IMG/VR virus record: IMGVR_UViG_3300042302_000394
Span: 124,001-188,000 of that record
Direction: 5' to 3' (one strand)
DNA: 64,000 bases
Under the pieces are notes generated by a model that made no database searches, was not told the DNA's origin, and worked only from the letters and a program-made list of their open reading frames with translations. Of the stretch, positions 12,085-64,000 are shown one piece after another. The first letter of the stretch is position 1. The number at the start of each line of letters is the position of its first letter. The position numbers were made by a program, and so were the translations under genes.

Positions 12085-12411
12085 TCATACTCTAAAACTT
12101 TCACCGCATCCACATCGGTCACGTTCGTTAGGATTCTTAAATTCAAATCCTTCATTAAGTCCGTTGCGTACCCAGTGTACTTCCAATCCATTAACATACG
12201 GATAAGATTTTCCATCTACCCAAACTTTAACACCGTTGCTTTCGTAGACAAATTGATCGCGAGTTACTGGAACATGATCTACAAATTCTAACGTATAAGC
12301 CAAGCCAGAACACCCTGTGGTTTTTACACCGATACGTATCCCTAGCCCTTTGCCTCTTCGTTCTAGATGTTTCTTAACTTTAGCGGCAGCTTGTTCCATT
12401 AATGTTATCAT
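12085..12411 (-). CDS. iscA: iron-sulfur cluster assembly protein IscA
   Basis: GCSGLAY, CGCGESF. Confidence 0.92.
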
Positions 12412-12786
12412 TTAATGTTTTTTACGATAATCTTCAACAGCAGCTTTAATAGCATCTTCAGCCAATATACTGCAATGTATCTTAACGGGCGGTAGTGCTA
12501 ATTCTTCAGCAATCTGGCTATTACGAATGTTACTAGCATCATCCACATGCATTCCTTTAACCATCTCAGTGACAAGACTGGAGCTGGCGATTGCTGAACC
12601 ACATCCATATGTCTTGAAACGAGCATCTCTAATAATACCATTTTCATCTACCTTTATCTGTAATTTCATTACGTCACCGCAAGCAGGTGCACCGACCATG
12701 CCTGTACCTACAGTGTCGTCTATTTCAAACTTACCTACATTACGAGGGTTTTCGTAATGGTCAATTACTTTATTTGAGTATGCCAT
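12412..12786 (-). CDS. iscU: Fe-S cluster scaffold IscU
   Basis: MAYSNKVIDHYENPRNVG, PACGDVM, YGCGSAIASSS, LPPVKIHCS; start moved to 12786. Confidence 0.95.
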   Translation of the reverse strand: MAYSNKVIDHYENPRNVGKFEIDDTVGTGMVGAPACGDVMKLQIKVDENGIIRDARFKTYGCGSAIASSSLVTEMVKGMHVDDASNIRNSQIAEELALPPVKIHCSILAEDAIKAAVEDYRKKH

Positions 12787-12790
12787 AGTT

Positions 12791-13891: not shown

Positions 13892-13903
13892 GTGTGGTTC
13901 TCT

Positions 13904-42406: not shown

Positions 42407-45400
42407 CTAAACAATGTAGCCTGCATCTAAGGCAGTAATGCCCACATGATTTGAGTCCGGAGTCCCGCCATCGTAATTACCGGATGCGCCGCTGCCACCC
42501 GATATAGTAACTACGACGGCTCCTGTGCCACTTGACACAGCAGACACTCCGTCCCCTAAGAATGTGATACTTGTAACGGTGTTAGTTATAGTAGTTGTTT
42601 GATCGACAATTTTAATAGAAGATCCTGATCCGGCGCTACCAGTGTAACCAACAGCAGCATATTCACCCGGGATACCTTGGCTACCAGTGTATCCTAGATC
42701 GCCCTTACTTCCGGTAAATCCAGTTTCACCTTGACTACCGGTAAATCCAGATCCTTGACTGCCGGTGTATCCAATACTGCCAATAAATCCAACTGATCCC
42801 ACAAATCCAGTTTCACCTTGACTACCTGTGAATCCGGTTCCTTGACTGCCGGTGTATCCAACTGATCCCACAAATCCAGTTTCACCTTGACTACCTGTAA
42901 ATCCAGCTCCTTGGCTACCAGTAAATCCAATACTGCCAGTGTATCCAACTGATCCCACAAATCCAGATTCGCCTCGACTACCTGTAAATCCAACTCCTTG
43001 ACTACCTGTGTAACCTAAATCGCCGGCAATACCCTGACTACCAGTGAAACCTGTAATGCCTTGACTACCTGTAAATCCAATACTGCCTGTATAACCTTTA
43101 CTACCCGTAAAGCCCTTGCCGCCGGCAACAGGTGTAAACACAACAATTAAATTAAACGTTGCTGATGCTGTTTGTGGAACTGTGTCTTGCACTGTCACAG
43201 TAAAAGCAGCAGAATTCGTCAGTACAGTAGGAATACCAGTGATAAATCCTGTAGCAGTGTTGAAACTTAGACCTGCAGGAAGATTAGGACTGATAGAATA
43301 AGTAACTGCACCAAAGCCCCCGGACACGATCACTGGCTGAAATTCTGTTTCAGCGTTTAATTCTAAAGCAACATCGCTGTTTTGCGGTGCAGCAACTAAC
43401 GACGGAGGAACAGCATCATTTACTACTAAGTTAAAGTTAGCCGACGCAGTTATGCCCACACTGTCCAATGCAGTTACTGTATAAGTTGCTGAGGATTCAG
43501 TAGTAGGGGTTCCTGTAATTTGTCCGCTGGCGGTGTTAAATGTCAATCCGATAGGAAGCGAAGGACTAATGCTATATGTTTTAGATCCAGTGCCGCCTGT
43601 AGCAGTGACAGGGCTGACTGCTGTAATTTGAACATACTCTGTCAATACAATAGTTGGATTATTAACTACGGCAACTAACGGTTGTGCGATTACAGATAGA
43701 CTAAAAGTGTTACTGCTGGTTTGCGATAAACTATCAGTTACTGTAACAGTAAAATTAGTAGAAGTTAATAGTGCAACAGGTGTTCCTGTTATTCTTCCTG
43801 TGCTGCTGGCAAATTGTAAACCAGTTGGCAAACTCGGGCTGATAGAAAATACTAGTGTACCATCGCCGCCTGTGGCAGTAACTGGAATAACGGGTGTGAT
43901 CGTTTGACTTATAACTAGCTCAACTGACGCAGTACTCAACACAGTGTTAACTGGCGGAGGATCTATTACAGTTAACAAGAATGTGGAAGAATTTGAAGAC
44001 CCTACACTGTCAGACACAATAACAGTAAAAGATGTAGCTGTCAACAAAGAATTAGGTTTACCGCCAACGAGTCCAGTGTTGACATTTAATGTCATTGTTG
44101 CAGGTAATGAAGGGCTTATGCTGTAAACCAAAGGAGCAATACCTCCAGCGCCGTTCACTGGTTTAAATGCTGTTGTTTCTTTTGTTCTTGTTGCAGTAGT
44201 TGAAGCAATCACCGTTGTTGCAGTAACAGGTGGATTGTTCAACGTTAAATTAAATTGTTTACTACTGACTTGTGCAATAGAATCATTTGCCGTAATAGTA
44301 TAAGTTTGGTTAACTAATACTGTGGCAACACCGCTGATTCTACCGTTGCCACTGTTAAAACTTAATCCTGCGGGCAAACTTGGGCTAATAGCAAAACTTA
44401 TTGAACCAAAGCCGCCGGATGCGCTTACCGGGACTATGCTGATTGTGTCGGTTACTCTGTTAAATGTAGCAGACGATATAACCAAAGTGGTAGTTAATGG
44501 TGGCGGCTCATTTACTGTTATTTTAAATGTGTTGCTGGCTGTTTGACTTAAACTGTCTGTAACAGTAACTGTATAAGTTGTTTCTGTTGATACAACTGTA
44601 GGGGTTCCAGTGATCTGTCCAGTTGAAGTGCTAAATGCTAGCCCTGCAGACAAATTTGGTGCTACGCCGTAAGAATAAATTAAAGACCCGCCTGTAGCAG
44701 TCACTGGTGTAAATGCTGAAATTGGTACAGTTCTAATCAGTGTCGAACCTGCAACAGATTGTTGTGCTTGTAATGGAGGCGTTTCAACTGTTAAACTAAA
44801 ACTCTCGCTAGCAGACTGTGTAGCCTGATCTGAGACTGTTACAGTATGATTGGTAGCAGTACGGAAAATAGTAGCGGTGCCTGATACCTGTCCAGTTGCT
44901 GCGTTAAAATTTAAACCTGTAGGGAGTGCTGGATTAATTGCAAATGTCAGTGTACCAAATCCGCCAGTTGCAGTTATTGGAATAAAAGGAGTGTCTGCTA
45001 GATTTTGAACCAGTGTCTTAGTACCAATACTGGAAATTATCAATATAGGTGCAGGGTCTACTTTAAGACTAAATGTTTTGCTGCTAGTCTGTGGGGTACT
45101 ATTACTGTCAGTTACTGTAACAGTGTTGTTGGTGTTAGCACTTACAACTGTAGAAGATCCTGTTATTTGTCCAGTCGCAGTATTAAATGACAATCCTGAG
45201 GGCAAGCTAGGACTAATTGCAAATGTCAGTGTACCTTCGCCACCACTTGCAGTTACCGGTGTAAAGGGAGCACTAACTTGCGAATTCTGAATCAATGTTC
45301 TAGAAGAAATCGCCAGTGTCGTTGATAATACAGGTGGGCCAACTAGAATAGTAAACTGTTTTGATGTAGTTTGTGTTGCTTGATCCGTTATGGTAACTGT

Positions 45401-47029
45401 ATACTGCGTCTGAGTAGAAGTAACAGTAGGACGACCAGATATTTGACCAGTTGTAGTACTGAATGTTAATCCAGCAGGTAGTGCCGGACTAATTGCATAA
45501 GATAAAGTTAAATACCCACCGCTAGCAGATACTGGAGTAAATGCCGTAATGGTAGTATTTTTAATGAATGTACTAGTTGCAACTAGTAGTGTTGAATTAA
45601 GAGCAGGTAATGCTTCAACTGTTAAACTAAAAGTTTTGCTGCTAACTTGTGAAGGACTACTAGAGTCAGTAACTGATACAGTGTAAGTCGAAGCTGCAAT
45701 GGCTTCAGTGGCCGTGCCCGATACTACCCCAGTTGATGTGTTAAAACTTAACCCAGCAGGCAATGCTGGACTAATTGAAAATGCTAAAGGCGTTATACCA
45801 CCGCTAGCAGTTACTGGAGTAAATGCTGTGAACGCAATAGTTCTAATTAGAGTTCTACTAGAAACATTTTGTACAGTAATTAGCGCCGGAGGAAGTATTT
45901 CTAAACTAAAAGTCTTACTGCTAGTAGCACCAGAACTGTCGCTAACAGTAATAACAAAATTATTCTGTGCAAAAGATACAGATGGTGTTCCTGAAATAAA
46001 TCCTGTTGCAGTATTAAATGTTAGTCCTGCAGGTAATGCAGGATTGATAGAATATGTTAAAGTTCCAATTCCGCCTGTACCATTAACTGGTTTAAATGCG
46101 GTAATAGATAAATTTTGTGTAAGTGTTCTACTTGCCGTGTCTAGTGTAGAACCCAATTGGGTTGCTCCTGCGGCAACAGCTAATGTAAATGTTGCACTGC
46201 CTGTTTGACCGCTAGCATCTGTAAAAGTCATTACATATGAAGTAGATGGCGATGCTACTGTAGGAGTTCCGGCGATAACAATATCAAGATAGTTGTACCA
46301 GTAATTAACTGTGTCCGCTGCTGTTATCGATTTAACAGTAGCATCAGTGATACTAACAGTTGCACCTGTATTCCACGCAACCTGTCCTATCGGTGATGTT
46401 CCTCCGCTTAGACTAGGATTAGCATTATATCTAAGCGTGATTGTGGATACTGTAACAGCAGTACATTCCCATATTCCGTTGTAGCTGGTTTTAGTTTGTC
46501 CTCTTACTGCGTAAAAACTTCCAGCAACAGGAGTTTGTCCGTTAGAAGTATATTGATATGTTACAGACCACGAAGTTCCAGATCCTGATATAGTAGGAGC
46601 AGTGCCAGAGACATTTAGATCAACTCTAGTTTTTTTAATAGCAAGTCCAGCAGGCAGTGCAGGATTGATACTAACATTTAAAATTTCAGTTGGTATCGCA
46701 CTTCCGCCGTACACACTTACCGGATTAAAGGTGGCCAGTGTGCCTTGTGTAAAATTCAATGTAGGAACTAAGGTCGTTGCTACAATATTAGGCGGAGTAG
46801 GAGGTGAAGCTAGACCGGGAAATCTAGAACCTGTTACGCCCAGGTAAGGTTTTGTTAAATCGTAGTTGCCCAGTGTAATCTTACCAGCAGACAACCCAGT
46901 ACCTAATACGCCCGTTCTGGCAGCGCCGTTTTGGTTGATATAAGCGTCTTGAGCACCGAAGTAATTGTCACCTGCTACAGTAGCGGGTGCAGGTTGAGCT
47001 GTTGGATAGGGAAAGTAATAAATGGTCAC
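42407..47029 (-). CDS. large fibre with tandem putative-Ig (He_PIG-like) repeats and collagen segment
   Basis: About 95-aa repeats (ISPALPAGL.FNT.TG.ISGTP); GTG start 7 nt after TAAATA. Confidence 0.8.
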   Translation of the reverse strand: MTIYYFPYPTAQPAPATVAGDNYFGAQDAYINQNGAARTGVLGTGLSAGKITLGNYDLTKPYLGVTGSRFPGLASPPTPPNIVATTLVPTLNFTQGTLATFNPVSVYGGSAIPTEILNVSINPALPAGLAIKKTRVDLNVSGTAPTISGSGTSWSVTYQYTSNGQTPVAGSFYAVRGQTKTSYNGIWECTAVTVSTITLRYNANPSLSGGTSPIGQVAWNTGATVSITDATVKSITAADTVNYWYNYLDIVIAGTPTVASPSTSYVMTFTDASGQTGSATFTLAVAAGATQLGSTLDTASRTLTQNLSITAFKPVNGTGGIGTLTYSINPALPAGLTFNTATGFISGTPSVSFAQNNFVITVSDSSGATSSKTFSLEILPPALITVQNVSSRTLIRTIAFTAFTPVTASGGITPLAFSISPALPAGLSFNTSTGVVSGTATEAIAASTYTVSVTDSSSPSQVSSKTFSLTVEALPALNSTLLVATSTFIKNTTITAFTPVSASGGYLTLSYAISPALPAGLTFSTTTGQISGRPTVTSTQTQYTVTITDQATQTTSKQFTILVGPPVLSTTLAISSRTLIQNSQVSAPFTPVTASGGEGTLTFAISPSLPSGLSFNTATGQITGSSTVVSANTNNTVTVTDSNSTPQTSSKTFSLKVDPAPILIISSIGTKTLVQNLADTPFIPITATGGFGTLTFAINPALPTGLNFNAATGQVSGTATIFRTATNHTVTVSDQATQSASESFSLTVETPPLQAQQSVAGSTLIRTVPISAFTPVTATGGSLIYSYGVAPNLSAGLAFSTSTGQITGTPTVVSTETTYTVTVTDSLSQTASNTFKITVNEPPPLTTTLVISSATFNRVTDTISIVPVSASGGFGSISFAISPSLPAGLSFNSGNGRISGVATVLVNQTYTITANDSIAQVSSKQFNLTLNNPPVTATTVIASTTATRTKETTAFKPVNGAGGIAPLVYSISPSLPATMTLNVNTGLVGGKPNSLLTATSFTVIVSDSVGSSNSSTFLLTVIDPPPVNTVLSTASVELVISQTITPVIPVTATGGDGTLVFSISPSLPTGLQFASSTGRITGTPVALLTSTNFTVTVTDSLSQTSSNTFSLSVIAQPLVAVVNNPTIVLTEYVQITAVSPVTATGGTGSKTYSISPSLPIGLTFNTASGQITGTPTTESSATYTVTALDSVGITASANFNLVVNDAVPPSLVAAPQNSDVALELNAETEFQPVIVSGGFGAVTYSISPNLPAGLSFNTATGFITGIPTVLTNSAAFTVTVQDTVPQTASATFNLIVVFTPVAGGKGFTGSKGYTGSIGFTGSQGITGFTGSQGIAGDLGYTGSQGVGFTGSRGESGFVGSVGYTGSIGFTGSQGAGFTGSQGETGFVGSVGYTGSQGTGFTGSQGETGFVGSVGFIGSIGYTGSQGSGFTGSQGETGFTGSKGDLGYTGSQGIPGEYAAVGYTGSAGSGSSIKIVDQTTTITNTVTSITFLGDGVSAVSSGTGAVVVTISGGSGASGNYDGGTPDSNHVGITALDAGYIV

Positions 47030-47052: not shown

Positions 47053-48744
47053 TTATGCTCTCACTGTCAAGTCTAATATGTCAAAATATCCTAATCCAGT
47101 ATCGTAACAAATGAATATAGCAGCATTGACATCATCATAGTAATAGTCACCGGGTTTAAGATCGCTTAGGCTTAATCCGTTTGCAGCATCTGCATTGGTA
47201 TACATTCTAGGTGCAGCTGACAGTTGTCCCGAGCCATCTGGAAATACTAGGGTGTAACCCGATTGTATAGTAATAGAACCGATACCGTCTGAAACAAGAC
47301 CTTCTACGGCACTACCTGTATAGCCAATGTCCCCTTGACTACCTGTATAACCATCACGTCCTATTACACCGTCAACACCTGCACTACCTGTGAATCCAAT
47401 ACTACCTGTATAACCTAGATCACCGGCGCTGCCTACATCACCTTTTTCTCCTTGCGAACCTACATAACCTACGTTGCCTCTCGAACCTACATAGCCCACA
47501 TCGCCTTGTGAACCTACATAGCCCACATCGCCTTTTTCTCCCTGCGAACCTACATAACCTACGTTGCCTCTCGAACCTACATAGCCCACATCGCCTTGTG
47601 AACCAGTATATCCATCTATGCCTTGGCTACCAGTAAAACCAATACTTCCAGTATACCCTAACTCTCCCTGCGGTCCTACAATATTTCCAACATCTAACCA
47701 ATCATCACCGACCCAAATGTTTAAGTGGCCATTATCAGATGTAATGTATCCATCACCGATATTTCCTAGATAGGACCCGGGGAGAGTTGCGTAGGTAGAA
47801 GTACTACCTAAAATCTGTACACTAGTACCGTCAGTACCTCGACTACCCACATAGCCCACATTTCCCTGACTACCTGTAAATCCTAATTCTCCTTGTGAAC
47901 CCGAGTATCCAATGCTTCCAGTAAAACCTAGATCACCTTGACTACCTGTAAATCCTAATTCACCTTGTGATCCGGTAAAACCTTGTGATCCAGTATATCC
48001 ACGACTTCCAGTAAATCCTATATCGCCTTGACTACCAGTAAATCCAGTATCACCAACTGATCCATCAACACCGGCACTTCCAGTAAATCCTATATCGCCT
48101 TGACTACCAGTAAATCCAGTATCACCAACTGATCCATCAACACCGGCACTTCCAGTAAATCCAGTATTGCCTTGACTACCAGTAAATCCAGTATCACCAA
48201 CTGATCCATCAACACCGGCACTTCCAGTAAATCCAGTATTGCCTTGACTACCAGTAAATCCAGTATCACCAACTGATCCAGTATAACCTACATTCCCTTG
48301 ACTACCTGTAAAACCTTGACTGCCTGTGTAGCCCGTATATCCGAGATTTCCCTGAGATCCAGTGTACCCGGTATCTCCACGCGAGCCTGTATAGCCAATA
48401 TTACCCTGCGAACCTGTATAGCCTGTAGGGCCTTGTATTTTTCCTACATCAACCCAAACTGTCCCGTCCCATACCCATAAATTTCCAGTGGCTTCTTCAA
48501 TAAATCCATCACCGGAATCGCCTGCGTAACTAGTTTCCAATTGAGTACTATTAGATACGCTGCCTGTAATAGTAACGCCACTACCCGAACCATTAAATTG
48601 CAGTAATCTGCCGCCAGGGGTAACGCCGTCACCTATGCGTAGGTCCCCTAATGTCTCATCATACCAAATTGTGCCCTTGTCCCCTACCCAGTCGTAAGAA
48701 TTGACAGTTATTATTCTACCGGCTTGTATTTTATAGATTGGCAT
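47053..48744 (-). CDS. collagen-like fibre protein
   Basis: GFT/GYT-GSQ collagen tract. Confidence 0.8.
48005..48279. repeat. 72-bp tandem repeat (about 3.8 copies) within collagen gene
   Basis: Unit starts at 48005, 48077, 48149, 48221; encodes [19 protein letters not shown](N/D)(T/I)GFT. Confidence 0.85.
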
Positions 48745-51983: not shown

Positions 51984-54683
51984 TTAGACTATGTTGATAA
52001 CATTACCCATTACGCCATGGATAGTGCATTGATAATACAGTGTAGATGGTGCATTCATTGGCACAGTAAATGTCTGTGTGCCTGCTTGACTGCCTGAAAC
52101 GCCGTCAGTATAAGCTGCGCCGCCGTCACTTACTCTAATAGCAAAGGGATGACTGCCACCCGTAGTGTTGATAAAAGTATAGGTAAATCCTCTGTATAGA
52201 TATAGCACAGGATCATTAGTGTTGCCTGCAACTACACCGGGTCCGCTGAATACGTAATCACTAGTTCCAGTAGATGATACTGACCACGTAATAGAAGCAC
52301 TAGGGCCAGTTGGCCCTGTATCGCCTTGTGGTCCTTGTGGTCCAGTTACTCCTTGTGGACCAGTTGGACCTACGTTTCCTTGAACGCCTTGTGAACCACT
52401 TGGCCCAGTTGGCCCTGATGGTCCAATAAATCCTATGCCGTTTGCTCCACTAGGTCCTGATGGCCCGGTTGGCCCGGTGGGTCCTGTGGCCCCGTCGACT
52501 CCTGTGGGTCCCGATGGCCCAGTAGGACCCGAAGGTCCTGCTACTGCGCTTGCCGGTCCTGCTGGTCCAGTGGCGCCTGATGGGCCAGTAGGTCCTGTAT
52601 CACCAGATGGTCCTTGTGGACCAGTTGGGCCTGCACCTGTAGGTCCTGTATCGCCTGGAATTCCTTGAGCACCTGATGGTCCAGTTGGACCAGTTGGACC
52701 TACAGCTCCTTGAACACCCTGTGGGCCAGTTGGACCCACGTCTCCTTGAACGCCTTGTGGACCTTGCGGGCCACCGGATGGGCCAGTTGGACCCACGTCT
52801 CCTTGAACGCCTTGTGGACCAGCAGGGCCAGTTGCACCAGTAGGCCCCTGTGGACCTACGTCTCCTTGAACGCCTTGTGGACCTTGCGGGCCACCGGATG
52901 GGCCAGTTGGACCCACGTCTCCTTGAACGCCTTGTGGACCAGCAGGGCCAGTTGCACCTACCGATCCTTGACCACCGGCAGGGCCAGTTGGACCCACGTC
53001 TCCTTGAACGCCTTGTGGACCAGCAGGACCAGTTGGACCTACAGCTCCTTGACCACCAGCAGGTCCTTGTGGGCCAGTTAGTCCTTGTGATCCGGTACTT
53101 GCAACTACAATACCATTTACACTTATATCACCTTCGAGTGTAACTTGCAAAGGAATACCGCCAAAATATACGGTGCTAGTCCCAACATACAAACTACGCC
53201 ATTGTTTATCAGCACTACCTAAATCAAATCTTATATCATCTGTTGGAATTAAACTGTTTTGCACTTGTAAGTCTGTACCTGTTGCCAGTGACCCTATCTT
53301 TGTAAACTTAAATGTTCCTGTTGATGAAAGCTCCGATGAAACTATGCTAGTAGTAGTAGTTCCGGAGTTAGTAAAAAACATAAACTTGGCAGTGGGGAAA
53401 GTCCCTGTGTTTTCAACTCGAACGTGTATTCTTGCGGGAGCCATGAATTGTGTTGGAGTTCGAGTTGAAAACACAAGCTCTGCAATATTATCATTTTCTA
53501 ACAAAGGTGTTGGTGCAGTTGCTGTTCCTCTAGTTCTAACCCATCTAAAATCTAATGCATCTGGTTGATCAAAGTGTTGTGAAAATGACCAACCTGCGGC
53601 ACCTGGTATAAAAAGTTCTCTAGACCAAGCAACACTTGTACCAGTATTAGAGGTAGCACCACCAATAAAAATTACCTGACTATCGAAATTGTAAGACATT
53701 GCTAAACTAGGAGAAATTTCTGTATTATTAGTTGTTCCGTAGAGTGCAAATCTTCCAAATTGACCAGGATTTACTCTTCCTTGTCTAATACCATCTATAC
53801 TAATTCCGGTTGTTGGATCTACAGATACTTGGTAATTGTCAAAGTACATGGATGTAGATGCTACATGTATCGTTCCACTGTTTAGGTATAGATTGCCTTG
53901 TCCAGTTAGTTCTAACTTTTTAACCCAGGTAGTTTCCTGTCCGGTGGTAGGGACTGTATAGGTTTCAAATGAATTGTCAGCAACACCGATACCGAATAAT
54001 GTCTGTGAATCACCCGGTCCCGTATCCCCTAGAAATAAAACTTGATTTATGTTTGCATCTTCATTTACTAAAACTGTTGATTGCTCGTATGCCGAGGCGA
54101 ATCCGTATGCTCGATATTCACCTCCGGTAAATGGAGTTGATTCTAAGTGACGTATTCTACTATAATTGTCACTATCATAACCTCCAACAACAATAGCTTG
54201 ACGAATGGTAAGTGTGTTAACATAGACGGTATTCCATCTACGTAGGTCAGATCCTAAGTTAAATTGGTTACTAGCATTGGGTAATACATTACCGGAAGTT
54301 ACTAAGTTTCCAAAGCTATTTAGACTAGTAACAAAAGATCCGTTAACCAGAGACGACGTGGTTGAAAATCCGCCCCCGGTACCGGCAGGGCCAGTTGGGC
54401 CAGTCTCACCTTGTGGCCCAGCAGGGCCGGTAGGACCGGCAGCTACAGTAAATTGAACAATATTTAATGCATCATTATATACAGCAGTCATGCCACTATG
54501 ACTACTATGAACTAATAGCGTAGCACCAGCGTCTGCTACTGCTTCTGTAAAATCAGTACCAGTTGTTCCTAGCAGTGTGGCAATTTCTGTAAAATTTTGA
54601 TTTACTTTGATAAATGCAGATCGTATGCTGTCACCGTCGCCTGAGTTTGCATTAGAACCTGTATTGATAACTTGAATGGTCAT
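51984..54683 (-). CDS. baseplate-anchored fibre: T4 gp9/gp10-like N-terminus, Pro-rich collagen, C-terminal cupredoxin-like domain
   Basis: [26 protein letters not shown]; GPT/GPQ triplets; SHPF...[11 protein letters not shown]. Confidence 0.75.
52738..52958. repeat. 120-bp-period direct repeat in collagen tract
   Basis: 52738-52838 identical to 52858-52958. Confidence 0.8.
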
Positions 54684-55049: not shown

Positions 55050-55562
55050 ATGAGTTCGACATTATTGTTAAATGCAGACGGAGCCCCGATTTCTTGGCTA
55101 CCGTTGAGCACAATTTCCTGGGAAGAATCTATTAAGTTCATAGTGCTTGAAAAAGCCACTGTGTTAGATGTCTACGATAATTGGGTCGTGCATAGTGCAA
55201 ACTGGGAAACACAGGTTCCTGCCGTTATGATTCTTCGCGAGTACGAAAAGCGCAAGACTGCAATTCGTTATTCCAAACATAATGTGTTCCTTCGTGATGG
55301 CTATACATGCCAGTACTGTGGGGATGATGTAAGCCGTAAAACAGCCACGTTAGACCACGTGCTGCCAGTTAGTCACGGTGGTAAGACTACCTTTGAAAAC
55401 ACTGTCTGCGCCTGCGCGAGCTGTAATGCAAACAAGGGTAACGACAAGAAGATTGTGCCAAAGCACAAGCCAGTTAAGCCCACCTACTATCAATTAGTAG
55501 ACAAGCGTAGACAGCAAAAGTGGGATATACCACACCCATCGTGGGCCAACTACTTAGGATAA
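55050..55562 (+). CDS. HNH endonuclease (McrA-like)
   Basis: RDGYTCQYCG...TLDHVLPVSHGG...NTVCACASCNANKG. Confidence 0.9.
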   Translation: MSSTLLLNADGAPISWLPLSTISWEESIKFIVLEKATVLDVYDNWVVHSANWETQVPAVMILREYEKRKTAIRYSKHNVFLRDGYTCQYCGDDVSRKTATLDHVLPVSHGGKTTFENTVCACASCNANKGNDKKIVPKHKPVKPTYYQLVDKRRQQKWDIPHPSWANYLG

Positions 55563-55602: not shown

Positions 55603-55821
55603 TTATTTTGAACGATATACTATACGACATTTAGTTAAGTCGTATGGGCTCATTTCTACCCTAACTCTATCCCCTAACAGTATTTGAATTCTGTTCTGTC
55701 GCATCTTGCCCGAGATGAATCCCAGAACTGCGGAACCTTGTTCCAACCTTACCCGAAACATTGCGTTGGGTAGTACTTCTTCGATCCTGCCCTCAAGGCT
55801 GATCATATCTTCTTTAGCCAC
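55603..55821 (-). CDS. infA: translation initiation factor IF-1
   Basis: [22 protein letters not shown]...[28 protein letters not shown]. Confidence 0.95.
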
Positions 55822-57391: not shown

Positions 57392-57420
57392 ATTATACAA
57401 CATTTTTGGAACAGTGTCAA
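57392..57420 (-). promoter_or_regulatory. sigma70-type promoter TTGACA-17-TATAAT
   Basis: Perfect consensus upstream of ligase. Confidence 0.8.
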
Positions 57421-57438: not shown

Positions 57439-57762
57439 TTAAATGGAGAAGCTACTGCCGCAGCCGCAAGTGGATTGAGCGTTTGGATTTTTTATTGAAA
57501 AGCTAGATCCGGAAAGATCTTCTTTGTAATCAATTTCGGCACCTTGTAGATACTGCATACTCATAGCATCTACTACGACTTTAAATTCACCAATTGGAAA
57601 TTGGAAATCATCTTCGTTAAATTCTTCATCAAAGGTAAATCCGTAACTAAATCCAGAACAGCCGCCACCTTGTACAAAGGTTCTTAAGGCAAGTTTTGGA
57701 TTATTTTCCTCCATTAGGAGGTCTGTAATCTTTGTCTTAGCATTTGATGTTATGTTGATCAT
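57439..57762 (-). CDS. A-type Fe-S carrier (ErpA/IscA family)
   Basis: [17 protein letters not shown]; start moved to ATG 57762, 5 nt after TAAATA. Confidence 0.9.
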
Positions 57763-57767
57763 ACTAC

Positions 57768-57784
57768 TATTTACACTATAAATA
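57768..57784. promoter_or_regulatory. back-to-back late-type boxes TAAATA (-) and TATAAATA (+)
   Basis: 57768-57773 on minus strand, 57777-57784 on plus strand. Confidence 0.6.
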
Positions 57785-57802
57785 TCCAAGCAGGAGAAAA
57801 AC

Positions 57803-57967
57803 ATGGAACAATACATGGATGACTTTCAAAACTACAAACGATTTACAGCTAAATGCAAATGCGGATGTCCTGCACACTGCAATCATAGTTGTACTGAATG
57901 CGAATACTGCCCGGACTGCGAATGTCCAGAGTGCATAGAATTAGATAATAGCAGAGGGTACAATTAA
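57803..57967 (+). CDS. Cys-rich metallothionein-like micro-protein (54 aa)
   Basis: CAGGAG SD; [27 protein letters not shown]; TAATG coupling to next gene; not in ORF track. Confidence 0.75.
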
Positions 57968-58320
57968 TGGCATACTGGTCTAGAGATGATACTAAAGAAT
58001 GGATCATACAGTTAGAGCATCGTATTGACGACATCGACTACTATTTGAATAAAACTTTAGAATGGTGCGAAGAATACGGTATAGAAAATCAACGTGTGAT
58101 TTTTATGTGCAGTTTCTTAACCTGTATTTGGGTTAGCCAGGTTCGGGGAGAGACTATAACGTTTACAGAACTAATGGAAATGTTAGGCGTTTCGGAATGG
58201 GAAACTAATTTTAATAACGAAGAAAAAATATATGAACTCGACAAGTGTTTCGCCGAGTTAGATCATCACGAGTTGTTAGAAACGGCCGTGCTGAAACTCA
58301 ATCAGAATGACGAGTGGTAA
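57967..58320 (+). CDS. hypothetical acidic protein
   Basis: 117 aa, coupled to preceding ORF. Confidence 0.7.
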   Translation: MAYWSRDDTKEWIIQLEHRIDDIDYYLNKTLEWCEEYGIENQRVIFMCSFLTCIWVSQVRGETITFTELMEMLGVSEWETNFNNEEKIYELDKCFAELDHHELLETAVLKLNQNDEW

Positions 58321-60251: not shown

Positions 60252-62216
60252 ATGCCTGATAGATCTATACAATTACTAACTGATGTTTTTCCAAATTCAA
60301 CTACAAATCATGGTAATTTGAACAATCCCGATATAATACTAGTCCAGGCACCTGGATGGGGAGTGCAAACAGCTCCGCTTTCTTTAGCATCACTTTCAGC
60401 CTATGTTCGGCAGAAAGGATACAAGATTTTACCATTAGATTTAAATGTTGAATTTTTTGCTATTAGACCTGAGAAATTTTCCATAATGTGGGACATAGAT
60501 CAATCTCAGTGGTTTTGGGAATCTAAAGACTGCGTTAATGACCTGTTAACCGAATACAAAAAAGAAATTGATGACTTTGTCGAGTTAGTGGTGTCGACTA
60601 ATACACCATTAGTTGGATTTAGTTTATACAACACTTCAATGCATACTTCGATGCATCTTATCAAACTGCTCAAAGCACGTAAGCCTGAGCTAAAGATTAT
60701 TGTCGGTGGTCCTCATGCCCACCGATATCTAGCTGGTAATGTTTTGGCAAAAAATCCGTTAATAGATGCAGTCGCCCAGGCTGAGGGAGAAGAAACATTA
60801 GTAGACATAATTGAGCGTGTTCGAAAAAATCAATCATTGCTCGATTGCCCTGGATTGTTAGTGTTTAAAGACGGAGCAGTACATGCTACTCCAACAAGGC
60901 CAATGATTCCAAAAATCGACACTCTTCCGATACCCCACTACAGTGATTTTTCATTAGCTCCTTACCTATCCCCAACACGATTACCAATGGCGTCTAGTCG
61001 AGGGTGTCCTAATAAATGTATATTCTGTAATGAGCAACCTTATTGGGAATCATATCGATTTCGGTCTGCAGAAAGCATGATTGAAGAAGTTAAGTACCAA
61101 TTAAAATTATATCCTGAAATTGACTTTATTGACTTTCAAGATAGTTTATGTAACGGGAAGATAAGCGCAATTGAAAAGTTTGCCGAATACCTCATTGAAA
61201 ATAAAATTAAAATACAATGGGCCGGACAGGCAGTTATTAGAAAAGAAATGACCGAAGAACTGATGATAAAATTAAAACAGTCCGGATGTGTGGTCATGGC
61301 CTACGGATTAGAAACTCCAAACCCTACACTTATGAGGAGTGTAGGAAAGTTATTATCAAAAGGTGCCGATATTGATAAAATTGCTGAATCTCATGCAAGG
61401 ACCGGACTTAATGCAGTTTACAATGTCATGTTTGGGTTACCGGGAGAAACTGAAGAAGATTCATTAATGGTCTTAGAGTTTTTAAGACGTAATTCAAAAA
61501 ATAAATTATATGTAAATCCCAGTGCAGCATTTTGCGGATTTGCTAACGGAACTCCTGGATGGGAGAACGCAGAAAAATTCGGTATTGACAAAACACTCGG
61601 CGGAACTTTTTGGAAAAGTGTAGATGGTAATAACACATTCCTAGTTCGATTAAAAAGATTTGAAGATTTTTGTCGATTAGTTTCCGACTTAGGTATAAAA
61701 ACCACTTATCCGTCGACATATCTTCTCAATAGAAATCAAGTCATTGCCCAATATTATATTGCAATAGGTCAACCAGAAAAAGCAATATACTATTACACAG
61801 AATGGGTTAAAGATCATCCCGAAGATCAAATAGCTAAAAAGTTTTTATTCGAATATTCAGGTTTCTTAAAAAGTACCCCAAGTTCAAATGTTTATGCAAT
61901 TAGCCGGCATTCGGATGAGAATTGGTTAAATGGTGTTGCTAGAAATTGGGGGCCTGCAATATTATTTTCACATGTTCCTTACATTTTAGAAGAATTAACA
62001 GTTGGTAAAATTGTACAGTTTTCAGATCTTCAAACAAGAAAAATAATTAGAGTTGAAGATAATTTTGAAAATGATTGTATTGTAATACACCTCGACGGCA
62101 CTCATTTAGATGGAGATCAAGTTGGTTGGCCAAAACTAATAACTGTTTTAGAGGAGCCTAGCAAAGTTATCCCTATTAAGATAGTTAATTACACAGAAAT
62201 AGATTTTAAAAAATGA
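60252..62216 (+). CDS. cobalamin-binding radical SAM enzyme
   Basis: VGFSLY..IIVGGPHA B12-binding domain; SRGCPNKCIFC CxxxCxxC; YGLET; TPR-like C-terminal segment. Confidence 0.88.
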   Translation: MPDRSIQLLTDVFPNSTTNHGNLNNPDIILVQAPGWGVQTAPLSLASLSAYVRQKGYKILPLDLNVEFFAIRPEKFSIMWDIDQSQWFWESKDCVNDLLTEYKKEIDDFVELVVSTNTPLVGFSLYNTSMHTSMHLIKLLKARKPELKIIVGGPHAHRYLAGNVLAKNPLIDAVAQAEGEETLVDIIERVRKNQSLLDCPGLLVFKDGAVHATPTRPMIPKIDTLPIPHYSDFSLAPYLSPTRLPMASSRGCPNKCIFCNEQPYWESYRFRSAESMIEEVKYQLKLYPEIDFIDFQDSLCNGKISAIEKFAEYLIENKIKIQWAGQAVIRKEMTEELMIKLKQSGCVVMAYGLETPNPTLMRSVGKLLSKGADIDKIAESHARTGLNAVYNVMFGLPGETEEDSLMVLEFLRRNSKNKLYVNPSAAFCGFANGTPGWENAEKFGIDKTLGGTFWKSVDGNNTFLVRLKRFEDFCRLVSDLGIKTTYPSTYLLNRNQVIAQYYIAIGQPEKAIYYYTEWVKDHPEDQIAKKFLFEYSGFLKSTPSSNVYAISRHSDENWLNGVARNWGPAILFSHVPYILEELTVGKIVQFSDLQTRKIIRVEDNFENDCIVIHLDGTHLDGDQVGWPKLITVLEEPSKVIPIKIVNYTEIDFKK

Positions 62217-62995
62217 AAAGTTTTTTAAATCAATATAATGTTATATCTGAAGATATACCAGGGTCCTTACAATTTCCCAGTGCATTAGTATGGGACTCGT
62301 TATTAGGTTATCAAACCGAAAATAAAGTTGTGCGTAATTTTTTAGAAATAGGTGTATTACATGGAAAGTCTGCAATGCTAAGTGGGCTATATGCACAGGC
62401 CAACAACACACAGCAGGTGATTGTAGATCCCGGTGAATGGATGGACACAACTTATTCAAATTTACTATCAAAGATTGAGGGATTAAATCTAAGATTAATA
62501 AATGATTATTCTAACAGTTTGGTGCATTTTCATTATTCTATTTTTCAAGAACATTCTCGCGATTATTCATGGTTTCATATTGATGGCGATCATAGTTATG
62601 CACAATGCTATAAAGATTTAATTTTAGCTGATCATTTTTTGTCTGACTATGGAGTTGTTATTGTTGATGATTTCTTTTCAACCATGTTTCCTCAGGTTAC
62701 AGCTAGCACTTTTTCATATTTAGAAAAACATCCATTAAATTTAAAAATGTTTTTAGTTGGTCAATGTAATAAAGCATATCTATGCAGACCGCCAGCATTT
62801 GATTTTTATAAAACGTTTTGCATAGATGTATTATCTAAAGATATGAAAGACCGAAAATATCCTGTAACTATAACTAAAACAACTTATCCTCAGGATTTTG
62901 ATTGTTACGGGTATCAACCCATAGGATGGACTGATGACAGAATGGAGTTTCGTGGTCCGGACTGGGATAGAACTAATTTTATAAAATATACCTAA
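62213..62995 (+). CDS. class I SAM-dependent methyltransferase (Methyltransf_24-like)
   Basis: FLEIGVLHGKS, FHIDGDHSY, VIVDDF. Confidence 0.82.
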   Translation: MKSFLNQYNVISEDIPGSLQFPSALVWDSLLGYQTENKVVRNFLEIGVLHGKSAMLSGLYAQANNTQQVIVDPGEWMDTTYSNLLSKIEGLNLRLINDYSNSLVHFHYSIFQEHSRDYSWFHIDGDHSYAQCYKDLILADHFLSDYGVVIVDDFFSTMFPQVTASTFSYLEKHPLNLKMFLVGQCNKAYLCRPPAFDFYKTFCIDVLSKDMKDRKYPVTITKTTYPQDFDCYGYQPIGWTDDRMEFRGPDWDRTNFIKYT

Positions 62996-62998
62996 CAG

Positions 62999-64000
62999 TT
63001 AATTTTTCCACCACGGCAAATATTTTTCTGTATTGTGATTTCGATAAGCATCCATCTTTTTTATTATCGAAACACTGTTTTTAAAATTTATATCTGACTC
63101 AGGTGTTCCGATTAAAAATGTAATCATTGCACTCAATATGTTAGCCTTTTCTTTAACTGCATCTTTTTCAAGTAGTTCTCTATTGTTTTCAAACCAGGTT
63201 GCAATTTCTTGATACACTGTATTTTTATAAGCTGTTGGTAAATTACTCGGGGATGCATAGCTTGGATCGTAGATATAATTTATGTGAGGAAAGTTTAAAA
63301 TATTCTTTCCTTCCAACCTCACAATATAATCTAACAATTCTGTAAATTTATGTGTATTAAAAATAGAAAACACAGTGTGAAACTCGATACCAATATTTTC
63401 GTTTTCATTCGAATATTGAACTATGCTATCAATATTATCTTTAACAATGTTCCATTTTCCAGGATATCTAATATATTCGTACATATCAGCAACAGCATCA
63501 ATACTTACTTTAATAGTCATAGTCTTAAAATGGCTCCAGATGTCAAACCATTTTGACGGTGTCACAGTTAAATTTGTATGTATAGATAAGTCAACCTGTT
63601 TAGATAAACCTGAACTAATTAGTTCTTTACAAAATGTATAAAAATCGTTGTTGATTAATGGTTCACCACCGGTTACTAATATCTGCACTAATCCGTCAGT
63701 CTTTACTAGGTCAAGGATATGTTTAATTTGATCATAGTTCCATTGAGCTTTATAATCACTTTCTTTTTCACCCCATGGTTTAATGTTGAGGAATTTAAAT
63801 TCTTTTATTAGTTGATCGCTAGCTCCCGGGGTACACATCTTGCATTGTAGATTACACTTATTCGACCAACTTAAATCTAAGTAATTTACATCAACAGATT
63901 CTAACTTGCCCGTATGCATTTCAGTGTTTGTTATAATATCTTCAATCGGCCATCTCTTTACAAACCAATTTCTAACACTTTCACCCCCATTGTCCTCAAC
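62999..64000 (-). CDS. radical SAM protein, partial (5' end beyond window)
   Basis: KCNLQCKMC, TGGEPL; frame stays open from 63919 to 64000. Confidence 0.85.
   Translation of the reverse strand, partial: VEDNGGESVRNWFVKRWPIEDIITNTEMHTGKLESVDVNYLDLSWSNKCNLQCKMCTPGASDQLIKEFKFLNIKPWGEKESDYKAQWNYDQIKHILDLVKTDGLVQILVTGGEPLINNDFYTFCKELISSGLSKQVDLSIHTNLTVTPSKWFDIWSHFKTMTIKVSIDAVADMYEYIRYPGKWNIVKDNIDSIVQYSNENENIGIEFHTVFSIFNTHKFTELLDYIVRLEGKNILNFPHINYIYDPSYASPSNLPTAYKNTVYQEIATWFENNRELLEKDAVKEKANILSAMITFLIGTPESDINFKNSVSIIKKMDAYRNHNTEKYLPWWKN

What the first reader, a model, noticed from the sequence alone, without database searches (positions are those of the whole stretch)
57768..57967. Unannotated metallothionein-like micro-protein divergent from the Fe-S carrier
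Seen: a 54-aa ORF with 10 Cys and 2 His in 27 residues ([27 protein letters not shown]), an exact TATAAATA box, a CAGGAG SD and TAATG coupling to the next gene. It is back-to-back with the ErpA/IscA gene. Established: CxC/CxxC clusters with His typify bacterial metallothioneins. Inference: a phage metal buffer (Zn/Cu) or Fe-S shuttle.
Basis: partly seen in the sequence, partly recalled or inferred. Interest (0 to 1): 0.6.

Follow-up and report, generated by a model that had tools for sequence, protein, structure and literature searches.

The report
Phage Cys10-His metal-cluster micro-protein
The 54-residue ORF is a real, strongly conserved gene for a phage-only micro-protein whose ten cysteines and one histidine never vary, so it almost certainly binds a metal cluster. 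Its repeated placement beside phage iron-sulfur assembly genes points to iron or Fe-S handling rather than classical metallothionein buffering, but no metal has been shown.

Summary
The ORF at 57803-57967 (+) encodes 54 aa with 10 Cys. It has a TATAAATA box, a CAGGAG Shine-Dalgarno site and a TAATG overlap with the next gene, and ErpA lies divergent. It is a real gene: about 150 phage or metagenome loci and 47 clusters at 50% identity carry it. dN/dS is about 0.05-0.15, and the 10 Cys plus His25 are invariant; His28 is not. It matches no Pfam, PHROG, NCBIfam or PDB entry. The pattern scan found no relative in 185,579 prokaryote species genomes, and tblastn found none in GenBank phages. It is therefore not a member of the SmtA/BmtA metallothionein family.

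The TATAAATA/NATAAATA box is a genuine T4-type late promoter in this roughly 350 kb freshwater jumbo phage.

The gene moves between contexts. In a relative (L087) it heads a micro-ORF-iscU-iscA operon opposite erpA. Elsewhere it sits in NrdA/NrdB/thioredoxin/ErpA clusters. In 39 loci it lies between a neck protein and tail gene gp15, and in 50 marine loci it lies beside a methyltransferase.

The phage fragment carries IscU, two A-type carriers and seven radical SAM genes. My best reading is a late-expressed metal-thiolate micro-protein serving iron/Fe-S handling (confidence 0.38). A Zn/Cu buffer, a Zn-knotted assembly adaptor and a RiPP precursor remain rivals.

The parts
57777..57784 (+). T4-type late-promoter box TATAAATA, starting 26 nt before the ATG
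   Evidence: Present in the sequence. Genome-wide, 9 of 15 TATAAATA copies and 28 of 47 ATAAATA copies lie within 60 nt upstream of ORFs on the same strand, against about 0.5 and 1.5 expected. The box is kept as TATAAATA or AATAAATA in context-A relatives. An ATAAATA box about 25 nt upstream also occurs in L070, L072/73 and L085/86.
57791..57796 (+). Shine-Dalgarno site CAGGAG, 6 nt before the start codon
   Evidence: Read. It is identical in all context-A relatives.
57803..57967 (+). Micro-ORF, 54 aa, P0001 (Cys10-His micro-protein)
   Evidence: Homologs were found. dN/dS is 0.05-0.15. It is the 4th most conserved of 32 reciprocal best hits with a related jumbo phage: 86.5% identity against a median of 55%.
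57854..57934 (+). Metal-ligand core C18-C44, pattern CxCxCxxHCxxxCxxCxxCxxCxCxxC
   Evidence: The 10 Cys and His25 are the only invariant columns across 25 sequences down to 38% identity. The full pattern is kept in 46 of 47 HMM-found clusters; the third ligand is C in 42, H in 3 and D in 1.
57967..58320 (+). Downstream 117-aa gene (dn117), coupled by the TAATG overlap, function unknown
   Evidence: It follows the micro-ORF in all context-A loci, including L055, which lacks ErpA. There is no Pfam, PHROG or NCBIfam hit. The AF2 model is helical with pLDDT 74 and has no significant PDB fold match. C34, C48 and C53 are invariant.
57439..57762 (-). Divergent A-type Fe-S carrier ErpA (107 aa)
   Evidence: PF01521 at E 1.5e-18; NCBIfam ErpA NF010147 at 160 bits against a cut-off of 117.
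12412..12786 (-). Phage IscU scaffold, a distant part of the same Fe-S toolkit. In relatives L057, L072, L086 and L087 this gene directly follows the micro-ORF.
   Evidence: PF01592 at E 3e-52. It is 89% identical to the L087 IscU, and the start was refined by alignment. Synteny was seen.
12085..12411 (-). Second A-type carrier (IscA-like), directly after IscU and NrdB/NrdA
   Evidence: PF01521 at E 5.8e-18. NrdB lies at 12791-13891 and NrdA at 13904-16234.
60252..62216 (+). B12-binding radical SAM enzyme, a possible Fe-S client and the first of a cluster of radical SAM genes
   Evidence: NCBIfam B12-rSAM families match at E down to 8e-33, all below their cut-offs. PF04055 hits in the genome number seven, four of them at C1:184993-190465. 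ATAAATA lies upstream.

Best explanation
The ORF encodes a late-expressed, phage-specific micro-protein. Its 27-residue core wraps a metal-thiolate cluster through 11 fixed ligands: 10 Cys and His25.

Most likely it handles iron, either as Fe(II)/Fe-S or as a small redox centre. It would work alongside the phage's own ISC-type machinery, namely IscU and two A-type carriers. That machinery would mature the phage's many radical SAM enzymes and other iron enzymes, for example by donating or accepting iron, a cluster or an electron.

Shown: the gene is real, under strong purifying selection, restricted to phages as far as the searches reach, has an invariant ligand set, and carries a T4-type late promoter with translational coupling. 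Its recurrent linkage to iscU, erpA/iscA and nrd genes is also shown.

Inferred: that it binds metal at all, that the metal is iron rather than zinc, and that it acts on IscU or the A-type carriers.
For: (1) Real gene. dN/dS is 0.05-0.15, and synonymous sites are saturated against more distant copies while the protein stays about 80-87% identical.

(2) Ligand logic. The only invariant columns are the 10 Cys and His25. 46 of 47 clusters keep the pattern, and position 22 swaps Cys to His (3 clusters) or Asp (1 cluster). That is typical of metal ligands and not of disulfides or thioether crosslinks.

(3) Fe-S synteny in several arrangements.
- L086/L087: erpA(-) | micro-ORF, then iscU by TAATG overlap, then iscA, followed by the same ligase, IF-1 and HNH genes as in the window.
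- L057 and L072/73: micro-ORF directly before iscU.
- L110: NrdA, x, micro-ORF, ErpA, Trx, NrdB.
- L099/L101: NrdA, ErpA, phrog_3704, micro-ORF.
- L063-66: NrdA, phrog_3704, micro-ORF, Trx, NrdB.
- L089: ErpA two genes upstream.
- L201 and L239: the micro-ORF lies 0.3 and 1.0 kb from iscU.

Both major Cys-spacing subtypes show this linkage.

(4) Demand. The 207.8 kb fragment encodes seven radical SAM enzymes, IscU and two A-type carriers. It has no Fer2 ferredoxin and no cysteine desulfurase.

(5) Other neighbours are often iron enzymes: fatty-acid desaturases in L056 and L060, and heme oxygenase in L056 and L068.

(6) T4-like environmental viruses that combine A-type carriers, IscU and many radical SAM genes are documented (PMC5332604).

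(7) The non-ligand N-terminal motif (YMDDFxNYKRF) is also strongly conserved. This argues for a specific partner rather than a passive sponge.
Against: - No experiment or model shows metal binding. The AF2 model is unusable at pLDDT 57.6.
- The complex prediction with IscU gave no answer, which is neither support nor evidence against.
- The linkage is not universal. 39 of 150 loci put the gene between a neck/virion protein and gp15. 50 marine loci put it next to an FkbM methyltransferase and unknown genes, and 9 put it next to an SNase nuclease.
- Of the 31 loci with IscU or an A-type carrier within two genes, 23 are the window's own close lineage, so the independent events are few.
- In the reverse direction, only 2 of the 80 sampled phage IscU loci (of at least 595) carry the motif within 10 kb.
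- These genes lie in accessory-gene islands rich in iron enzymes, so the background rate of adjacency is raised.
- The alternating CxCxC run resembles Zn/Cu-thiolate clusters more than classical Fe-S motifs (my own knowledge).
- There are no Fer4, rubredoxin or other Pfam hits.
Confidence: 0.38

Rival explanations
1. Classical metallothionein-like Zn(II)/Cu(I) buffer. The Cys10-His core forms a Zn or Cu thiolate cluster; 11 ligands would fit an M4-type cluster. It buffers or sequesters these metals in the infected cell late in infection.
For: Cys makes up 37% of the core, with CxC, CxCxC and CxxC runs and KC/CK dipeptides. The ligands are invariant and include a Cys/His swap. The 11-ligand count equals that of Zn4Cys9His2 in SmtA or M4Cys11 in the mammalian alpha domain (my own knowledge). 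The gene is a free-moving cassette with no obligatory neighbour.
Against: There is no match to the prokaryotic metallothionein model or to any solved metallothionein. No copper or zinc homeostasis gene recurs next to it. The conserved aromatic and charged N-terminal motif and the 83% identity of non-ligand residues between related phages are unlike metallothioneins, whose non-Cys residues drift. No rationale for late-phase Zn/Cu buffering is evident.
Confidence: 0.2
2. Zn-knotted adaptor or assembly factor. Zinc only staples a tiny fold. That fold presents the conserved N-terminal motif to a phage or host protein, for example during neck/tail completion or loading of metal into tail proteins.
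For: In 39 loci the gene lies between a virion structural protein (phrog_11591) and the tail sheath stabiliser gp15, with start/stop overlaps on both sides. It carries a late promoter wherever it stands alone. It is translationally coupled to whatever gene follows. The N-terminal motif is conserved.
Against: Minimal members of 34-41 aa lack the N-terminal motif entirely. In the window lineage and many others the gene is nowhere near structural genes. No virion proteomics is available. Small accessory ORFs are commonly inserted between structural genes of T4-like phages (my own knowledge).
Confidence: 0.2
3. Precursor peptide of a radical-SAM-modified RiPP (sactipeptide or ranthipeptide-like), whose Cys residues are crosslinked rather than bound to metal.
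For: A B12-radical SAM gene and a methyltransferase lie 2.3 kb downstream in the window, and the rSAM resembles RiPP C-methyltransferases at E about 1e-32, well below the family cut-offs. A radical SAM gene lies within 4 kb in 8 of 50 marine loci, and 15 loci have two copies of the micro-ORF motif.
Against: The rSAM neighbour is absent from most contexts, from the context-A relatives that carry a different downstream gene, and from all neck/gp15 and RNR/IscU contexts. No protease or exporter recurs. There is no NCBIfam precursor hit. Cys to His/Asp swaps at ligand position 22 fit metal ligation and not thioether chemistry. The Cys core is invariant and the N-terminal part is dispensable, whereas RiPP precursors usually have a conserved leader (from memory).
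Confidence: 0.04
4. Chance ORF or non-coding spacer between ErpA and the 117-aa gene.
For: It is very short, matches no protein family and has no transcript data.
Against: dN/dS is 0.05-0.15. There are about 150 loci and 47 clusters, all ligands are invariant, and the frame is kept across at least 15 different genomic contexts.
Confidence: 0.01

Closest known systems
Bacterial metallothioneins SmtA/BmtA (Pfam PF02069) and mycobacterial MymT
   Same: They are small (about 50-56 aa) cytoplasmic proteins very rich in Cys, with CxC motifs and a His among the ligands. SmtA uses 11 ligands (Cys9His2), which matches the 11 invariant ligands here (my own knowledge).
   Different: No sequence relationship was detected to the Pfam model or to PDB entries. 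The Cys spacing differs. There is a conserved aromatic/charged N-terminal motif. The family was found only in phages, its genomic company is Fe-S/RNR or tail genes rather than metal-resistance genes, and it is expressed as a late phage gene.
Miniature iron redox proteins: rubredoxin (about 54 aa), desulforedoxin (36 aa), clostridial 2x[4Fe-4S] ferredoxin (55 aa)
   Same: The size class is the same, with Cys ligands packed in CxxC knuckles (CPDC and CPEC here). They serve as one-electron donors to di-iron enzymes, heme oxygenase, radical SAM enzymes and ISC assembly, which are the kinds of genes found next to this micro-ORF (function of these families from my own knowledge; neighbours).
   Different: There are no Pfam hits to rubredoxin or Fer4 families. 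Ten Cys compressed into 27 residues with an alternating CxCxC run is unlike their motifs. No iron binding has been shown.
ISC accessory proteins encoded in isc operons (Fdx, IscX, CyaY) and the Cys-rich CIAPIN1 domain of Dre2/anamorsin
   Same: The gene sits in an iscU-iscA operon in L086/L087, L057 and L072. The protein is small and acidic, with net charge -5. Dre2 is a Cys-rich Fe-S module that serves both Fe-S assembly and the RNR di-iron cofactor (my own knowledge), paralleling the IscU and RNR contexts here.
   Different: There is no homology to any of them, and the ligand pattern differs. Most phage IscU loci lack this gene.
Viral Fe-S auxiliary gene sets in T4-like environmental phages (Nishimura et al. 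2017, PMC5332604)
   Same: These are T4-like uncultured phages encoding A-type carriers, IscU and up to a dozen radical SAM enzymes. The window phage has the same toolkit.
   Different: That work does not mention a Cys-rich micro-protein; 'cysteine-rich' gave 0 hits in the paper. The micro-ORF would be a previously unlisted member of such gene sets.
SCIFF/ranthipeptide precursors
   Same: Both are peptides of about 45-55 aa with a conserved Cys-rich C-terminal half.
   Different: No dedicated SPASM-type radical SAM maturase is adjacent in most loci. Ligand-type Cys/His/Asp swaps occur. There is no NCBIfam hit.

Membership tests
Prokaryotic metallothionein (SmtA/BmtA, Pfam PF02069) | Sequence match to the family model or to a solved member | tested here: not met
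   No Pfam family at E<=0.1. A profile of 25 members finds no PDB chain at E<=10.
Prokaryotic metallothionein (SmtA/BmtA, Pfam PF02069) | Small size, high Cys content, CxC/CxxC clusters with His ligand(s) | tested here: met
   54 aa, with 10 Cys and 2 His in 27 residues. The 10 Cys and His25 are invariant.
Prokaryotic metallothionein (SmtA/BmtA, Pfam PF02069) | Demonstrated Zn/Cd/Cu-thiolate cluster and a metal-tolerance phenotype | not testable with these tools
   Needs recombinant protein with ICP-MS or native MS, plus complementation.
Metallothionein in the broad operational sense | Few or no aromatic residues and little conserved non-Cys sequence | tested here: not met
   There are 6 Tyr/Phe in 54 aa. 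The N-terminal YMDDFxNYKRF motif is conserved, and about 83% of non-ligand residues are identical between two related phages whose shared proteins have a median identity of 55%.
Ferredoxin (Fer4/Fer2) or rubredoxin | Match to the family models or the canonical CxxCxxCxxxCP or paired CxxCG knuckle layout | tested here: not met
   No Pfam or NCBIfam hit. The spacing is CxCxCxxHCxxxCxxCxxCxxCxCxxC.
Component of a phage ISC-type Fe-S assembly gene set | Encoded in or next to iscU/iscA/erpA in more than one independent arrangement | tested here: met
   Window and its relatives: divergent erpA. L086/87: micro-ORF-iscU-iscA. L057 and L072: micro-ORF-iscU. L110, L099 and L101: with ErpA inside RNR clusters.
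Component of a phage ISC-type Fe-S assembly gene set | Regular co-occurrence with phage IscU | tested here: not met
   Only 2 of 80 sampled phage IscU loci have the motif within 10 kb. 39 loci place it in the neck/tail operon. Record-level co-occurrence is inconclusive because the contigs are 9-58% complete.
Component of a phage ISC-type Fe-S assembly gene set | Physical or functional interaction with IscU or an A-type carrier | tested here: inconclusive
   The complex prediction with the window IscU plus Zn scored 0.01 against a mark of 0.32, verdict 'no answer'. Biochemistry is needed.
RiPP precursor (SCIFF/ranthipeptide-like) | Adjacent dedicated radical SAM maturase, conserved across family members | tested here: not met
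   A radical SAM gene lies within 4 kb in 8 of 50 marine loci, in none of the neck/gp15, RNR or IscU contexts, and in the window lineage only among near-identical loci.

The most novel reading that the evidence does not exclude
The micro-protein founds a new, phage-exclusive class of miniature iron or iron-sulfur proteins with Cys10-His ligation in under 30 residues. In its ancestral arrangement it heads a viral iscU-iscA operon. It acts as the iron, cluster or electron donor that lets jumbo and T4-like aquatic phages mature their own radical SAM, di-iron RNR and desaturase enzymes late in infection, independently of host ferredoxin or frataxin-type factors.
Probability: 0.25. Interest if true: 0.8.

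Novelty: new variant of a known kind. Interest (0 to 1): 0.55.

Why it matters
Micro-proteins of this size are routinely missed in phage annotation. This one is among the most conserved proteins shared by a widespread lineage of roughly 350 kb freshwater jumbo phages. The locus is present in at least 24 lake metagenome runs from 23 studies, though any of them may be the source sample. Relatives occur in marine and estuarine phages.

If it is an iron or Fe-S handling factor, it would be a missing, virus-specific part of the viral Fe-S auxiliary toolkit of IscU, A-type carriers and many radical SAM enzymes. It would also be one of the smallest natural multi-ligand metal sites, which is of interest for metalloprotein design. 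If it turns out to be a Zn/Cu thionein, I know of no earlier report of a phage-encoded metallothionein; two literature searches found none.

Either way it is cheap to test, since a 54-aa peptide is easily expressed or synthesised.

Tried and rejected
- **Family scans.** Pfam, PHROGs and NCBIfam scans of the micro-protein gave no hit.
- **PDB profile searches.** The 4-sequence profile gave only chance-level hits at E>=0.23. The 25-sequence profile gave none at E<=10.
- **GenBank phages.** tblastn of three family members against 50,697 GenBank phage records gave no match. BLAST's low-complexity filter may hide Cys-rich hits. Megablast of the locus also found nothing. The ligase has no cultured relative above 35% identity.
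- **Prokaryote genomes.** A pattern scan of 185,579 species genomes matched 38 stretches, none of them a relative.
- **Structure.** The AF2 model of the micro-protein has pLDDT 57.6, too poor for a fold search. An ESM Atlas feature search gave only unnamed clusters at scores of 0.83 or less.
- **Complex prediction.** IscU plus the micro-protein plus 3 Zn gave verdict 'no answer'. This is neither support nor evidence against.
- **Downstream 117-aa gene.** The fold (pLDDT 74) had no PDB match at E<=0.001. Weak winged-helix-like rows at E>=1.7 were disregarded.
- **Recurrent 371-aa marine neighbour.** It belongs to a phage-only hypothetical family with at most a weak glycosyltransferase flavour.
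- **Literature.** Two searches for phage metallothioneins found nothing relevant.
- **Expression.** No RNA run holds the locus. Read laying was therefore not used, because contigs cannot show expression.
- **'Unrelated lineages share the gene'.** I rejected this idea. BLAST found no context-B structural genes in the window record. However, the record is only 58% complete, and a context-B phage shares 32 reciprocal best hits with it. These are related jumbo phages in which the gene has moved.

Full report
**1.

Window 57803-57967 (+) is an ATG-to-TAA ORF of 54 codons. The stretch from C18 to C44 contains 10 Cys and 2 His. TATAAATA lies at 57777-57784 and CAGGAG at 57791-57796. The stop overlaps the start of the next ORF (57967-58320) as TAATG.

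On the opposite strand, 40 bp from the start codon, lies a 107-aa A-type Fe-S carrier at 57439-57762. It matches PF01521 at E 1.5e-18 and the NCBIfam ErpA model at 160 bits against a cut-off of 117.

The window is positions 124001-188000 of a 207.8 kb IMG/VR virus record that CheckV rates 58% complete, so the phage is roughly 350 kb. The locus is held near-identically by at least 24 lake-water metagenome runs from 23 studies, any of which may be the source sample. No RNA run holds it.

**2. It is a real gene and defines a family**

- A word-based protein search found three clusters at 78-84% identity.
- A scan of IMG/VR found 57 loci.
- A scan of JGI metagenomes found 94 loci, of which 80 were kept.
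- An HMM search of 1.84 billion representative proteins found 47 clusters at E<=1e-3. All are stand-alone proteins of 42-88 aa, and none is a domain of a larger protein.

Against close relatives dN/dS is 0.05-0.15. Against more distant copies synonymous sites are saturated while dN stays near 0.1.

In an alignment of 25 members reaching down to 38% identity, the only invariant columns are the 10 Cys and His25. Gly21 is nearly invariant, and His28 is variable.

Of the 47 HMM-found clusters, 46 keep the full ligand pattern. The third ligand, position 22, is Cys in 42 clusters, His in 3 and Asp in 1. Cys/His/Asp interchange at one fixed position is what metal ligands do. Disulfides and thioether crosslinks do not behave this way.

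Three spacing subtypes exist, each with ten Cys. Minimal marine members of 34-41 aa are essentially the bare core.

No source gives any member a name other than 'hypothetical protein', and none comes from NCBI or UniRef.

The searches below found nothing, so as far as they reach the family is phage-only and uncharacterised.
- Pfam, PHROGs and NCBIfam.
- PDB.
- GenBank phages by tblastn.
- 185,579 prokaryote species genomes by pattern scan.

**3. Expression signals**

By simple count TATAAATA is not enriched in the window: 5 copies against 5.8 expected. Across the whole record, however, 9 of its 15 copies lie within 60 nt upstream of ORFs of at least 80 aa on the same strand, against about 0.5 expected. 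For ATAAATA the figure is 28 of 47 against 1.5 expected. This is the T4-type late promoter consensus (my own knowledge), and it is clearly used by this phage.

The box is kept as TATAAATA or AATAAATA in the window-type relatives. An ATAAATA box about 25 nt before the start codon also precedes the gene in other contexts, namely L070, L072/73 and L085/86.

Where the gene has no box of its own, it is embedded in a late structural operon with overlapping stop and start codons. The gene is therefore consistently a late gene.

**4. Genomic company**

The gene is a mobile cassette. I classified 150 loci by their neighbours.

| Context | Loci |
|---|---|
| IscU or an A-type carrier within two genes | 28 |
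| Both an A-type carrier and RNR genes | 3 |
| RNR or thioredoxin genes only | 6 |
| Between a virion structural protein (phrog_11591) and the tail sheath stabiliser gp15 | 39 |
| Marine/estuarine group: DUF6267, two unknown genes, the micro-ORF (two motif copies in 15 loci), an FkbM methyltransferase | 50 |
| Before an SNase nuclease | 9 |
| Other | 15 |

L072/L073 fall in the marine row because of a shared unknown gene family, although their micro-ORF directly precedes iscU.

The most telling arrangements are these:
- **L086/L087:** erpA(-) | micro-ORF, iscU by TAATG overlap, then iscA. The same ligase, IF-1 and HNH genes as in the window follow, so this is a relative in which the micro-ORF heads an isc operon.
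- **L057 and L072/73:** micro-ORF directly before iscU, in both major spacing subtypes.
- **L110:** NrdA, x, micro-ORF, ErpA, thioredoxin, NrdB.
- **L099/L101:** NrdA, ErpA, phrog_3704, micro-ORF.
- **L063-66:** NrdA, phrog_3704, micro-ORF, thioredoxin, NrdB.

In the window itself IscU (12412-12786) and a second A-type carrier (12085-12411) follow NrdB and NrdA. The ancestral micro-ORF-iscU-iscA unit appears to have been split. The micro-ORF stayed beside erpA while iscU-iscA moved next to the RNR genes.

The 207.8 kb fragment also encodes seven radical SAM enzymes, four of them just downstream of this locus. It has no Fer2 ferredoxin and no cysteine desulfurase.

Other neighbours include fatty-acid desaturases, heme oxygenase and peptide deformylase. 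T4-like environmental viruses combining A-type carriers, IscU and many radical SAM genes have been described, without mention of such a micro-protein (PMC5332604).

**5. Limits of the Fe-S link**

- Of the 31 Fe-S-adjacent loci, 23 are the window's own close lineage, so independent events are perhaps seven or eight.
- In L055 the ErpA gene is missing, yet the micro-ORF and the downstream 117-aa gene remain.
- In a related jumbo phage the ligase module carries an A-type carrier but the micro-ORF sits 70 kb away in the neck operon. That phage (G001) shares 32 reciprocal best hits at a median 55% identity, and the micro-protein ranks 4th at 86.5%.
- In L070 the gene lies between two genes whose homologs in the window's genome are adjacent without it.
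- Starting from IscU instead, only 2 of the 80 sampled phage IscU loci (of at least 595) carry the motif within 10 kb.
- Record-level co-occurrence cannot be judged, because the contigs are 9-58% complete.
- These genes lie in accessory islands already rich in iron enzymes, which raises chance adjacency.

**6. Structure and interaction attempts**

AF2 gave pLDDT 57.6 for the micro-protein, as expected for a metal-dependent fold. The complex prediction with the window IscU and three Zn ions returned 'no answer', which is not evidence either way. The coupled 117-aa gene folds as a helical protein with pLDDT 74, has three invariant Cys and no significant fold match.

**7. Interpretation**

That the protein binds a metal cluster through 11 fixed ligands is very likely; I put it near 0.85.

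Which metal, and to what end, is inferred. I favour an iron/Fe-S handling role alongside the phage ISC proteins, at 0.38. The reasons are that the isc-operon arrangement recurs in different subtypes, that the phage has a heavy Fe-S demand with no ferredoxin seen in the fragment, and that the conserved N-terminal motif implies a specific partner.

The rivals are:
- a Zn/Cu thionein-type buffer (0.20);
- a Zn-knotted late assembly adaptor linked to the neck/tail module (0.20);
- a RiPP precursor (0.04);
- a chance ORF (about 0.01).

The remainder is left for functions not considered here.

**8. Comparison with known families**

The protein works like a metallothionein in the descriptive sense, but it fails the membership test for SmtA/BmtA. 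There is no model or structure match, aromatic residues are present, and non-Cys sequence is conserved.

It shares size and likely clients with rubredoxin, desulforedoxin and mini-ferredoxins, but not their motifs. It shares operon position with ISC accessory factors, but no homology.

I therefore rate it a new variant of a known kind, the Cys-rich metal-binding micro-proteins. It forms a new, phage-restricted family.

Noticed in passing
window 57392-57420 (-): A perfect sigma-70 consensus promoter (TTGACA, 17 nt spacer, TATAAT; 12 of 12 matches) lies between the ErpA stop and the DNA ligase start. The ligase may therefore be an early gene read by host RNA polymerase, unlike the late micro-ORF.
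   Followed up: no
whole record G000; window 57777-57784 and other sites: TATAAATA/NATAAATA is strongly positioned upstream of genes genome-wide: 9 of 15 and 28 of 47 copies lie within 60 nt of ORF starts. The phage therefore uses T4-type late promoters.
   Followed up: partly
window 12085-16234 (-): NrdA (13904-16234), NrdB (12791-13891), IscU (12412-12786) and a second A-type carrier (12085-12411) form one co-directional block. Ribonucleotide reductase and Fe-S scaffold genes are thus linked in this phage.
   Followed up: partly
window 60252-64000 and beyond (G000:C1:184993-190465): The 207.8 kb fragment has seven radical SAM genes, four of them clustered just downstream of the micro-ORF. 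They include a B12-binding rSAM (60252-62216) followed by a Methyltransf_24 gene (62213-62995).
   Followed up: partly
window 55603-55821 (-) and 55050-55562 (+): The phage encodes a translation initiation factor IF-1 homolog (PF01176, E 3.6e-25) next to an HNH endonuclease. Both are conserved next to the ligase in related phages.
   Followed up: no
window 57967-58320 (+): The 117-aa gene coupled to the micro-ORF is acidic and helical, has three invariant Cys (C34, C48, C53) and matches no family or fold. It stays with the micro-ORF even where ErpA is lost, as in L055.
   Followed up: partly
L090, L096, L098, L102-104, L109, L114, L131, L141, L142, L146-148, L152: Fifteen marine or estuarine loci carry two copies of the micro-ORF motif. 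In the two loci read in detail the copies are adjacent (L090) or separated by the FkbM gene (L114), and each copy keeps the ligand core.
   Followed up: no
L068 6153-6575 and L069 581-1003: A SegE-type GIY-YIG homing endonuclease gene directly follows the micro-ORF in an RNR cluster, with a 46-aa zinc-ribbon ORF just before it. This is a possible route for the cassette's mobility.
   Followed up: no
L072 1350-4661; marine loci such as L118 565-1680: An unknown, phage-only family of about 371 aa neighbours the micro-ORF in the marine group. It occurs as three tandem paralogs between ErpA and the micro-ORF in L072. It has at most a weak glycosyltransferase-like flavour.
   Followed up: partly
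window 29391-33971, 37820-39799, 40131-42374, 42407-47029, 47053-48744, 51984-54683 (-): A run of very large fibre-like proteins carries collagen repeats, 11 He_PIG Ig domains, six Laminin_G_3 domains and an Mtd N-terminal domain. A 1122-aa fusion of two glycosyltransferases and an FkbM methyltransferase lies at 25425-28793.
   Followed up: no
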